A stretch of DNA of 63,064 bases, filler included, from Olpidium bornovanus S191 (lineage: Eukaryota > Fungi > Olpidiomycota), in NCBI GenBank assembly GCA_017911155.1. It is 26 parts of 26 records of this genome, joined end to end, with 100 filler letters (N's around TTAATTAATTAA, not from the genome) between each part and the next. Parts side by side here need not be neighbours in the genome. Positions count along the whole stretch, not along the records: positions 37,329 to 38,657 come from JAEFCI010006693.1; 25 more parts are not named here. One strand, given 5' to 3'. The position numbers and the translations under genes were made by a program. This document shows, one piece after another, positions 37,329 through 38,758 of the stretch. Position 1 is the first letter of the stretch; every line of letters starts with the position of its first letter. The notes beneath the pieces were generated by a model. It made no database searches. It was not told where the DNA came from and saw only the letters and a program-made list of their open reading frames with translations.

Positions 37329-38492
37329 CCCTCGCAATCAAACTCGCGAGACTCTCGCAGCCACTCGTTCACAAACGCCGTCGTCAACGGGAAAGTCTGC
37401 ATGAGCCAGAAGACCATCTTCCGCGTTACCCTCGCCACTTTTAAGTCTCCCGGCTTCGTTATGAACAGAAGGTTCTGGACGCGCGGCAGTCGAACCACCT
37501 GCTGGTTCAACTTCGAGAACGCGTTCATGATTTCCATGTACCCGTTGGCCAGCGCCCGGACACATCCTCGCGACCCCTGCGTCACACAGCTCGAAAGGTG
37601 GTCTGTTAGCGTCAACGCCGTCAAGGTTTGGCTACGGTTGTCTTGCTGGGAGGAGGCGGGGGTTGGGGGGAGGGGGGAAATGTCGTTATGCCAAATAAAA
37701 GAGCGGCGGCCGTGGAAATGTCAAATCCTGACTTTACATCCTCGGCTTTTGGACCGCTTGCGTAAGCCGATGGCATTTCGCTCACAAGCTGCTTGCAGCG
37801 GCCGCGTATCGTCAAAACGCCGGCCGGAGGATTCTGCAGAGTCCTTAAGAAATGCTTCCGCGTCCCTGGGGAATCTGTATCAGATTTATAGTTATTTTCT
37901 TTTTTCGCACGGAAACGGGGACACAATTCGCGATGTGAATTTGCCCGCCACGTTACCAGTTGTCTCTCACCTTCCAGTGTGACCCAGTCGCCGTCCTCGT
38001 CCATCCACTGGAAGACATACCTTTCGGCGCTGGCCGTGAGGTTGAACACCTGGTCGAACTTTTTGGCGATACACTGCACAGACAGTTCATCCCCTTACCG
38101 AAATTAAGGCCGCGCGCGTGCAGGTGTGTCGGCAAAACGAGTGGCCTTTTTCGCCCGCCCGCCACTCTCCCGCCGCCATCCGCGCGCGCGTTCTCTCTCC
38201 GCCAACGCTCCCCCCTTAACCCCGCACCCCCCCTCTCCCCACAACCACGTTTTTTTTTTTTTTTTTTTTTTCGTGCGAAATCGCCGGTTTTCGGACAAGG
38301 AAAGACCACCCTACAGTTCAGCCGGACATACTGGGCCTCCCCGAGCAGCTTGAGCTTCAGCTCCACCGAAACCTCGCCGGAGGTCCGGGGGTCGGCCCCT
38401 GCGTGGTGGGGGTGGCCGCCCAAAGGCAGGCGCGCGTCGGGCTGCGCGCGGCCGTCCAAGGGGCGGAGGGATTGCGGACGACCGGCGTCCAT
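37329..38492 (-). CDS. PB1-domain / NAD kinase (Utr1/Yef1-like) fusion, 3'-partial
   Basis: Phase-consistent GT-AG exons 38492-38315, 38093-37971, 37874-37786 and 37645-37329. PB1: VELKLKL...FQWMDEDGDWVTL. Then VQNLLFITKPGDLKVARVTRKMVFWL...FVNEWLRESREFD, matching the N-terminal region of fungal NAD kinases. Confidence 0.7.
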
Positions 38493-38564
38493 ATCGCGGT
38501 TTCCGGGGGTGGGGGTGGGGGGGGGGGGGGGGGGGCCCCCCCCCCCGCCCCCCCCCCCCCCCCG

Positions 38565-38609
<45 letters not shown>

Positions 38610-38758
38610 CCCCCCCCCCCCCCCCCCCCCCGCCCCCGCCACAACCACACCGCCCGCNNNNNNNNNNNNNNNNNNNNNNNNNNNNNNNNNNNNNNNNNNN
38701 NTTAATTAATTAANNNNNNNNNNNNNNNNNNNNNNNNNNNNNNNNNNNNNNNNNNNNC

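What the first reader, a model, noticed from the sequence alone, without database searches (positions are those of the whole stretch)
37329..38492. PB1 domain fused to an NAD kinase
Four exons join in frame (phases 1, 1, 0) to link a PB1 domain (basic K plus acidic DEDGD OPCA motif) to a segment matching the Utr1/Yef1 NAD-kinase N-terminus (compare fungal VMIVTK.RD..L..LTRE...WL and VYVDAKLR.SKRFD). Established: fungal PB1 domains assemble Cdc24-Bem1 and the NADPH-oxidase regulator NoxR. I know no NAD kinase with PB1. Inference: a kinase that could dock on a Nox/polarity scaffold and supply NADP(H) locally for ROS production, or polymerise through PB1. The catalytic GGDG motif lies beyond the gap and is not seen.
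Basis: partly seen in the sequence, partly recalled or inferred. Interest (0 to 1): 0.72.

Follow-up and report, generated by a model that had tools for sequence, protein, structure and literature searches.

The report
PB1 domain joined to NAD kinase
This is the expressed, correctly spliced 5' part of a gene that joins a PB1 protein-docking domain to an NAD kinase, an unstudied pairing that is nevertheless already present in public sequences of many early-diverging fungi, so it is a new member of an existing family and not a unique invention.

Summary
On the minus strand, an ATG at 38492 opens four exons with GT-AG introns in phases 1, 1, 0. Assembled contigs from two independent studies of the same organism carry exactly these junctions in one molecule. 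The third intron uses two alternative donors 48 nt apart, both in frame. Exon 4 starts at 37645.

Exons 1-3 encode a divergent PB1 domain with a beta-1 lysine and a DEDGD acidic motif. Exon 4 encodes a conserved linker helix and the first ~46 residues of the NAD kinase N-domain. The GGDG motif lies beyond the piece and was not seen.

Forty-eight of the 196 fungal NAD kinases fetched at that point carry the same N-terminal domain. They come from Mortierellomycota, Glomeromycotina, Basidiobolus, Syncephalis, Synchytrium, Spizellomycetales and Rhizophlyctis. All 23 that I put in a tree fall in one strongly supported paralogue clade. One passes Pfam's PB1 threshold, and UniRef names two of them "PB1 domain-containing protein". 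A predicted structure of one such domain matches the PB1 domains of NBR1, aPKC and p40/p67phox.

I found no paper that describes the fusion. Its function (self-assembly, scaffold docking or cis-regulation) remains inference.

The parts
38493..38505 (-). Minimal 5' UTR: the RNA-derived contigs end 5-6 nt beyond 38500, at the edge of the G/C homopolymer tract
   Evidence: table 8 (record ends)
38315..38492 (-). Exon 1 (178 nt, ends in phase 1). It encodes the ATG, about 40 low-complexity residues, then PB1 strands beta1-beta2, including the conserved beta-1 lysine (VELKLKL)
   Evidence: weak but colinear match to positions 4-20 of the family profile
38094..38314 (-). Intron 1, 221 nt, GT-AG, containing a 22-nt A run (T run on the + strand, 38250-38271)
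   Evidence: joint 38092|38314 (cut +1) in X1 and X6
37971..38093 (-). Exon 2 (123 nt): PB1 helix alpha1 and strands beta3-beta4 with the OPCA motif WMDEDGDWVTLE
   Evidence: Pfam PB1 E 0.003; family N-terminal profile 31.1 bits; NBR1 PB1 alignment
37875..37970 (-). Intron 2, 96 nt, GT-AG. It is a multiple of 3 without a stop, but it is spliced out in both contigs
   Evidence: joint 37874|37971
37786..37874 (-). Exon 3, short form (89 nt, ends in phase 0): the end of PB1 (helix alpha2, strand beta5, GVLTIRGR)
   Evidence: X6 contig; colinear weak match to family profile positions 80-85
37738..37785 (-). Alternative 48-nt extension of exon 3 (16 residues, in frame) through a downstream donor GTAAAG at 37737
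   Evidence: X1 contig joint 37645|37738
37646..37737 (-). Core of intron 3 (92 nt, or 140 nt with the upstream donor at 37785); acceptor AG at 37647-37646 after a pyrimidine tract
37472..37645 (-). Exon 4, first part: linker and the conserved helix (YMEIMNAFSKLNQQVVRLP) that precedes the kinase domain in fungal NAD kinases
   Evidence: alignments
37329..37471 (-). Exon 4, second part: the first ~46 residues of the NAD kinase N-terminal domain (LLFITKPGD ... FVNEWLRESREFD), cut by the edge of the piece
   Evidence: phmmer hits align to positions just before and into PF01513 of the homologues; region profiles 69.5 / 59.6 bits

Best explanation
The piece holds the promoter-proximal 5' part of an expressed gene for a PB1-NAD kinase. 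This is a member of a distinct NAD-kinase paralogue clade of early-diverging fungi in which a ~95-residue PB1 domain and a conserved linker helix precede an ordinary two-domain ATP-NAD kinase. Shown: the splicing, the single transcript, the PB1 and NAD-kinase homologies, and the conservation of the architecture. Inferred: the kinase part makes NADP+ from NAD+ as its relatives do, and the PB1 domain is a protein-protein contact module. It keeps both the basic beta-1 lysine and the acidic OPCA face, the form described for type I/II PB1 domains such as p62, aPKC and plant NBR1. Through front-to-back PB1 contacts it would cluster the kinase oligomers or tether them to another PB1 protein, and so set where or when NADP(H) is made. 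My split for the PB1 role: PB1-PB1 contact of some kind about 55% (self-assembly about 30%, a heterologous partner about 25%), cis-regulation of the kinase about 20%, other about 25%.
For: The spliced contigs from two studies join all four exons with GT-AG introns in frame. Exon 4 hits only NAD kinases among 1.84 billion representatives (Mortierella alpina E 2.2e-06, Modicella, Actinomortierella, Synchytrium, one JGI protein), and all carry PF01513, most with PF20143 as well. Region profiles give 69.5 bits (PB1-clade members) and 59.6 bits (other fungal NAD kinases). Exon 2 hits Pfam PB1 (E 0.003) and the family N-terminal profile (31.1 bits). Eight of ten homologues tested have a Pfam PB1 match at the N-terminus, and one is above the gathering score (P0049, 25.7 bits). 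The family profile hits PDB PB1 domains of NBR1, Cdc24 and PKC zeta/iota. The AlphaFold model of P0049:1-100 has pLDDT 89.6 and the order beta-beta-alpha-beta-beta-alpha-beta. Its best Foldseek matches are PB1 domains of NBR1, aPKC-Par6, p40/p67phox and MEK5/MEKK. In a tree built from the kinase part alone, all 23 PB1-bearing rows sit in one clade with SH-aLRT 100. The beta-1 Lys is kept in 25 of 28 family members (Arg in 3) and the first OPCA Asp in 27 of 28.
Against: The catalytic part (GGDG, the NE/D motif, the C-terminal domain) of this organism's gene was not seen. The organism's own full-length protein was not retrieved. Pfam's NAD_kinase model, NCBIfam and PDB sequences gave nothing for exon 4 alone. 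Runs X1 and X6 are only guessed to be RNA, and two RNA-seq raw-read runs laid no read. No evidence bears on any PB1 partner, and the homodimer job returned no verdict. In Spizellomycetales the OPCA acidic residues are degenerate, so self-polymerisation cannot be the universal role.
Confidence: 0.8

Rival explanations
1. One reading: the PB1 domain docks the kinase on the NoxR/Bem1/Cdc24 polarity and NADPH-oxidase scaffold, so that NADP(H) is supplied locally for ROS production.
For: The fold and sequence are closest to PB1 domains that include Cdc24 and p40/p67phox. The basic lysine is kept in every lineage, while the acidic face decays in Spizellomycetales. That pattern fits a conserved acidic (OPCA-bearing) partner better than obligatory self-assembly. 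This is inference.
Against: No partner was tested. Whether this organism has Nox/NoxR is unknown from a 1.3-kb piece. PB1 matches to NBR1 and aPKC are as good or better. I found no paper linking NAD kinase and PB1.
Confidence: 0.15
2. The N-terminal beta-grasp domain acts in cis as a regulatory or autoinhibitory lid on the kinase, as N-terminal extensions do in other eukaryotic NAD kinases, and not as a PB1-PB1 docking module.
For: The PB1 domain is always followed by a conserved linker helix directly abutting the kinase domain. Alternative splicing changes the linker by 16 residues, which could tune such a contact. From general knowledge, the human NADK N-terminus is inhibitory and plant NADK2 is regulated through its N-terminal extension.
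Against: Conservation is concentrated on the two canonical PB1 interaction faces (Lys 25/28, first OPCA Asp 27/28, DGDW in most). That is what intermolecular PB1 contacts predict.
Confidence: 0.2
3. The fragment belongs to a decayed or truncated gene: PB1 and the kinase start are present, but no working kinase follows.
For: Only the first ~46 residues of the kinase domain are visible. The organism's full protein was not found in 15 billion predicted proteins.
Against: The transcript contigs run 715 and 932 nt past the piece's edge. The frame is open across all junctions. One of two differences from the RNA contigs is synonymous and none is disruptive. The whole clade keeps a full kinase.
Confidence: 0.05
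4. The link between PB1 and kinase is an assembly artefact (a chimeric contig or a mis-joined piece).
For: The piece is short and ends in a long G/C homopolymer tract typical of assembly trouble. Logan contigs can span two genes.
Against: The genomic piece and two spliced contigs from different studies agree. The same colinear architecture exists in dozens of independently assembled fungal genomes.
Confidence: 0.03

Closest known systems
PB1-NAD kinase paralogues of early-diverging fungi, e.g. Basidiobolus ranarum K7432_007436 (P0049), Linnemannia schmuckeri BG015_009754 (P0016), Mortierella alpina NAD kinase (P0001; UNY86307.1 in the same 90% cluster), Synchytrium microbalum NAD+ kinase (P0004), Syncephalis fuscata (P0048)
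   Same: The same order: PB1 (beta-1 Lys, W-x-D-x-D-G-D-W OPCA), a conserved linker helix, then an NAD kinase start of the type 'ILIVTKP-DP-L..LT..L..WL'. Exon 2 and exon 4 align colinearly.
   Different: Only 31-40% identical in the parts seen, about the distance between fungal phyla. The window's protein has ~40 extra low-complexity residues before PB1 and an alternatively spliced 16-residue linker insert. Its kinase body is unseen.
Saccharomyces Utr1/Yef1-type (long) fungal NAD kinases and their Mucorales, Basidiomycota and Blastocladiomycota relatives
   Same: The start of the kinase domain and the preceding helix match.
   Different: In the fetched set they have no PB1 domain and form separate clades on the kinase-domain tree. 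Several species have both a long form and a PB1 form.
Canonical PB1 domains (Pfam PF00564): NBR1, p62/SQSTM1, aPKC-Par6, Cdc24-Bem1, p40phox-p67phox, MEK5-MEKK2/3
   Same: Beta-grasp fold in the order beta-beta-alpha-beta-beta-alpha-beta, an OPCA acidic motif after beta3 and a lysine on beta1. These are the best sequence-profile and Foldseek matches.
   Different: Very divergent: most family members fall below Pfam's gathering score. It is attached to a metabolic enzyme, not to a kinase-signalling, polarity, autophagy or oxidase adaptor.
N-terminally regulated NAD kinases of animals and plants (human NADK, plant NADK2); from general knowledge, not tested here
   Same: A regulatory extension lies N-terminal to a conserved NAD kinase core.
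   Different: As far as I know, those extensions are disordered phospho-regulated or calmodulin-binding segments and not a folded PB1 domain.

Membership tests
PB1 domain (Pfam PF00564) | Score at or above Pfam's gathering threshold (23.6 bits) | tested here: inconclusive
Exon 2 alone scores 17.9 bits, E 0.003, over profile positions 27-56 of 84. Homologue P0049 passes (25.7 bits), and seven others match at the same place with 12.8-23.3 bits.
PB1 domain (Pfam PF00564) | Ubiquitin-like beta-grasp fold, beta1-beta2-alpha1-beta3-beta4-alpha2-beta5 | tested here: inconclusive
   Met for homologue P0049:1-100 (pLDDT 89.6; top Foldseek matches are PB1 domains of NBR1, aPKC, p40/p67phox). Not folded for the window's own domain, which would need joined exons.
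PB1 domain (Pfam PF00564) | OPCA acidic motif (D-x-D/E-G-D-x8-D/E) after beta3 | tested here: met
   Exon 2 reads WMDEDGDWVTLE, followed by the junction codon D. It aligns to the family's OPCA columns.
PB1 domain (Pfam PF00564) | Conserved basic Lys on beta1 | tested here: met
   Exon 1's VELKLKL aligns with the family's LrlKl (Lys in 25/28). The exon-1 alignment alone is weak (0.8 bits), but it is colinear.
ATP-NAD kinase (Pfam PF01513 + PF20143) | Match to the NAD_kinase N-terminal domain | tested here: inconclusive
   Pfam's own model gives no hit on the ~46 residues present. However, phmmer finds only NAD kinases, aligned from just before PF01513 position 1, and region profiles score 59.6-69.5 bits.
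ATP-NAD kinase (Pfam PF01513 + PF20143) | GGDG motif and the NE/D and glycine-rich motifs of the catalytic site; C-terminal beta-sandwich domain | not testable with these tools
   They lie beyond 37329. The contigs that extend 715/932 nt further are not readable here, and the organism's protein was not retrieved.
PB1-NAD kinase paralogue clade of early-diverging fungi | Colinear PB1, conserved linker helix and kinase start on one transcript | tested here: met
   One spliced contig in each of two studies. Exons 2 and 4 match the clade's profiles in the right order.
PB1-NAD kinase paralogue clade of early-diverging fungi | Placement inside the clade on a kinase-domain tree | not testable with these tools
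   Too little of the kinase domain is in the piece. The PB1-clade profile scores only 10 bits better than the other fungal profile. The clade itself is well supported (SH-aLRT 100).

The most novel reading that the evidence does not exclude
The PB1 domain makes this NAD kinase part of a higher-order assembly. That could be PB1-driven head-to-tail polymers of kinase oligomers (a p62/NBR1-like metabolic filament or body). Or it could be a kinase tethered by its basic face to an OPCA-bearing scaffold such as Cdc24 or a Nox regulator, so that NADP(H) is produced at a defined cellular site. This would be an unreported way of spatially organising NADP(H) supply, ancestral in fungi and apparently absent from the Dikarya and Mucorales sequences fetched here.
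Probability: 0.2. Interest if true: 0.7.

Novelty: new member of a known kind. Interest (0 to 1): 0.4.

Why it matters
NAD kinase is the only enzyme that makes NADP+, so how cells place and regulate it determines NADPH supply for biosynthesis, redox defence and NADPH oxidases. A conserved fusion to a dedicated protein-docking domain, kept for a long time across several early-diverging fungal phyla, points to a regulatory or spatial layer that nobody has studied. I found no paper that names both NAD kinase and a PB1 domain. The family includes Mortierella alpina, which is oleaginous, so its lipid output should depend on NADPH supply. The window itself adds a divergent, expressed, alternatively spliced member. 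It does not add a new kind.

Tried and rejected
- Pfam, NCBIfam and PDB-sequence searches of exon 4 alone found nothing. The ESM Atlas feature search gave only a weak lead to an NAD-kinase cluster, score 0.78.
- Rfam found no RNA family in the piece.
- I tried three times to retrieve the organism's own full-length protein by adding the exon rows, unjoined, to alignments of homologues. No hit was more than 40% identical to exon 4 (checked).
- A JGI metagenome scan with exon 4 found no relative.
- RNA-seq raw-read runs X22 and X23 laid no reads, which is no test.
- Complex prediction on two copies of the P0049 PB1 domain returned 'no answer' (score 0.00). This is not evidence for or against self-association.
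- My first exon-4 acceptor at 37576, chosen by eye after a CTAAC branch-point-like motif, was rejected by the contigs in favour of 37645.
- An alternative exon 1/2 join in phase 0 (donor after 38328, acceptor before 38073) was considered and rejected for the same reason.
- A lectin hit (6gxs) and the Tektin hits in the PDB searches are repeat or coiled-coil noise.
- All searches were exon by exon, by reference.
- The organism could not be named. The runs are coded, and the nearest relatives are about equally distant early-diverging fungi.

Full report
WHAT IS IN THE SEQUENCE

The piece 37329-38657 carries one gene on the minus strand. An ATG at 38492 opens a frame that stays open across four exons:
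- exon 1, 38492-38315
- exon 2, 38093-37971
- exon 3, 37874-37786
- exon 4, from 37645 to the edge of the piece at 37329

All introns are GT-AG, with lengths 221, 96 and 140 nt.

I did not have to rely on consensus rules. When assembled contigs of public runs of the same organism were laid on the piece, one contig from run X1 (1483 nt) and one from run X6 (1653 nt), from different studies, skipped exactly these three introns. Each linked all four exons in a single molecule.

Intron 3 has two donors. X6 uses GTGAGC at 37785 and X1 uses GTAAAG at 37737. The two forms differ by 48 nt (16 residues) and both are in frame, so this looks like real alternative splicing in the linker.

I had first placed the exon-4 acceptor by eye at 37576. 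The contigs put it at 37645, 69 nt upstream in the same frame. The contigs continue 715 and 932 nt past the left edge of the piece, so the transcript goes on well beyond what the window shows.

Caveats:
- The two runs are only guessed to be RNA. Precise removal of GT-AG introns that are present in the genomic piece is hard to explain otherwise.
- Two true RNA-seq raw-read runs laid no read, which is no test.

THE KINASE END

Exon 4 alone has no Pfam, NCBIfam or PDB-sequence hit. An exhaustive phmmer search of its last 82 residues against 1.84 billion cluster representatives found five proteins with E <= 0.001:
- Mortierella alpina, E 2.2e-06
- Modicella reniformis
- Actinomortierella ambigua
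- Synchytrium microbalum
- one JGI protein

All five are NAD kinases by Pfam (PF01513, most also with PF20143). The match covers the helix just before the kinase domain and its first ~46 positions.

I built profiles of that region myself. The profile from PB1-bearing relatives scores exon 4 at 69.5 bits, and the profile from other fungal NAD kinases scores it at 59.6 bits.

GGDG and everything after it lie outside the piece and were not seen.

THE PB1 END

Exon 2 alone gives Pfam PB1 at E 0.003 (17.9 bits, below the 23.6 cut-off) and a weak NBR1 PB1 alignment. The decisive evidence comes from the relatives.

The Mortierella, Synchytrium, Basidiobolus, Syncephalis and glomeromycete NAD kinases all carry a ~95-residue N-terminal domain, and exon 2 aligns to it colinearly. 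In eight of ten relatives tested, Pfam PB1 matches that domain. One of them (Basidiobolus ranarum, P0049) is above the gathering score.

Further support for PB1:
- A profile of nine such N-termini scores exon 2 at 31.1 bits. It places exon 1's VELKLKL and exon 3's GVLTIRGR weakly, but in the right order.
- A 28-sequence profile finds the PB1 domains of NBR1, Cdc24 and PKC zeta/iota in the PDB.
- An AlphaFold model of P0049:1-100 built on that alignment is confident (pLDDT 89.6) and has the PB1 order of elements.
- Its best Foldseek matches are PB1 domains of NBR1, aPKC-Par6, p40/p67phox and MEK5/MEKK.

Across the family, the beta-1 lysine is kept in 25 of 28 members (arginine in the other three). 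The first OPCA aspartate is kept in 27 of 28, with D-x-D/E-G-D-W in most. The acidic motif is degenerate in Spizellomycetales. The window has both the lysine and WMDEDGDWVTLE-D, so in form it has both PB1 faces.

HOW COMMON IS THE ARCHITECTURE?

It is not unique. My N-terminal profile hit 48 of the 196 fungal NAD kinases fetched at that point. They come from:
- Mortierellomycota (many genera)
- Glomeromycotina (Rhizophagus, Funneliformis)
- Basidiobolus
- Syncephalis
- Synchytrium
- Spizellomycetales
- Rhizophlyctis

It hit none of the Mucorales, Basidiomycota, Blastocladiomycota or Coemansia sequences fetched.

I built a tree of 64 chosen rows, subsampling Mortierellomycota, from the kinase part only. 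All 23 PB1-bearing rows fall in one clade with SH-aLRT 100. The eight rows without PB1 inside that clade include short or partial gene models. Several species also have a separate long, Utr1-like kinase in other clades. This was a quick search, unrooted, with some long branches.

The fusion therefore looks old and arose once, defining a paralogue. Public annotation has already noticed it in places. P0049 has PF00564 + PF01513 + PF20143 on record, and UniRef names P0049 and P0016 'PB1 domain-containing protein'.

The open literature has not noticed it. No paper in the library holds both 'PB1 domain' and 'NAD kinase', or both PB1 and NADK. The four papers with 'NAD kinase' and 'PB1' as whole words look unrelated by title and abstract; two are on influenza.

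WHERE THE WINDOW'S GENE SITS

It is a divergent member. It is at most ~40% identical to any retrieved relative in exon 4 and 38% in exon 2. No closer protein exists among the representatives. Three alignment-seeded searches and a metagenome scan failed to retrieve its own full-length product. I cannot name the organism. The nearest relatives are early-diverging fungi.

MECHANISM

Shown: one transcript encodes a PB1 domain, a linker helix and the start of an NAD kinase, and the arrangement is conserved.

Inferred from the families: the kinase phosphorylates NAD+ to NADP+, and the PB1 domain mediates front-to-back PB1 contacts.

Both faces are conserved in most lineages, so self-assembly of the already oligomeric kinase is plausible. 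The basic face is universal while the acidic face decays in one order, so an OPCA-bearing partner is about equally plausible. A cis-regulatory role through the conserved, alternatively spliced linker cannot be excluded. The one complex prediction I could run (two copies of the P0049 PB1) returned no verdict.

VERDICT

- The piece is a new, divergent member of an existing, uncharacterised PB1-NAD kinase family.
- Interest is moderate. The family deserves an experiment, but the window adds little beyond another member and evidence of alternative splicing.

Noticed in passing
window 38505-38640: The piece ends in a G run (about 38505-38535) followed directly by a C run of about 100 nt with a few interruptions. 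The spliced contigs stop right at its edge. It looks like an assembly or sequencing artefact or an unusual promoter-proximal homopolymer tract, and it probably explains why the contig breaks here.
   Followed up: partly
window 38250-38271: A 22-nt T run (A run on the gene's strand) lies inside intron 1. Read laying skipped 38239-38280 as a repeat.
   Followed up: no
window 37394 and 38368: Both RNA-derived contigs differ from the window at two places. 37394 A>G is synonymous (ACT to ACC, Thr). 38368 G>A changes codon 42 from TCG (Ser) to TTG (Leu), just before PB1 strand beta1. This is probably a strain difference.
   Followed up: partly
window 37738-37785: An alternative 5' splice site adds 16 residues (VSEMPSAYASGPKAED) to the PB1-kinase linker in run X1 but not in X6. 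Each form was seen in one contig only.
   Followed up: partly
P0002, P0019, P0024, P0037, P0039, P0062 (Mortierellomycota gene models of 698-890 aa): In these long models the PB1 match starts only at profile position 25 and lies 300-430 residues into the protein. In P0002 it sits behind a membrane-protein-like N-terminus. These are probably gene models fused to an upstream neighbour with the first PB1 exon missed, not a different architecture.
   Followed up: no
P0197 (Logan-derived, 766 aa): A divergent clade-like NAD kinase from an AT-rich organism. By eye it has a PB1-like segment with a degenerate acidic motif, although my N-terminal profile did not hit it. It also has a ~200-residue Asn/Ser-rich linker before the kinase. 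Source unknown.
   Followed up: no
window 37401-37982 (+ strand): A 193-codon ORF runs antisense to exons 3-4 and intron 3. Nothing supports it as a gene. It was not searched.
   Followed up: no
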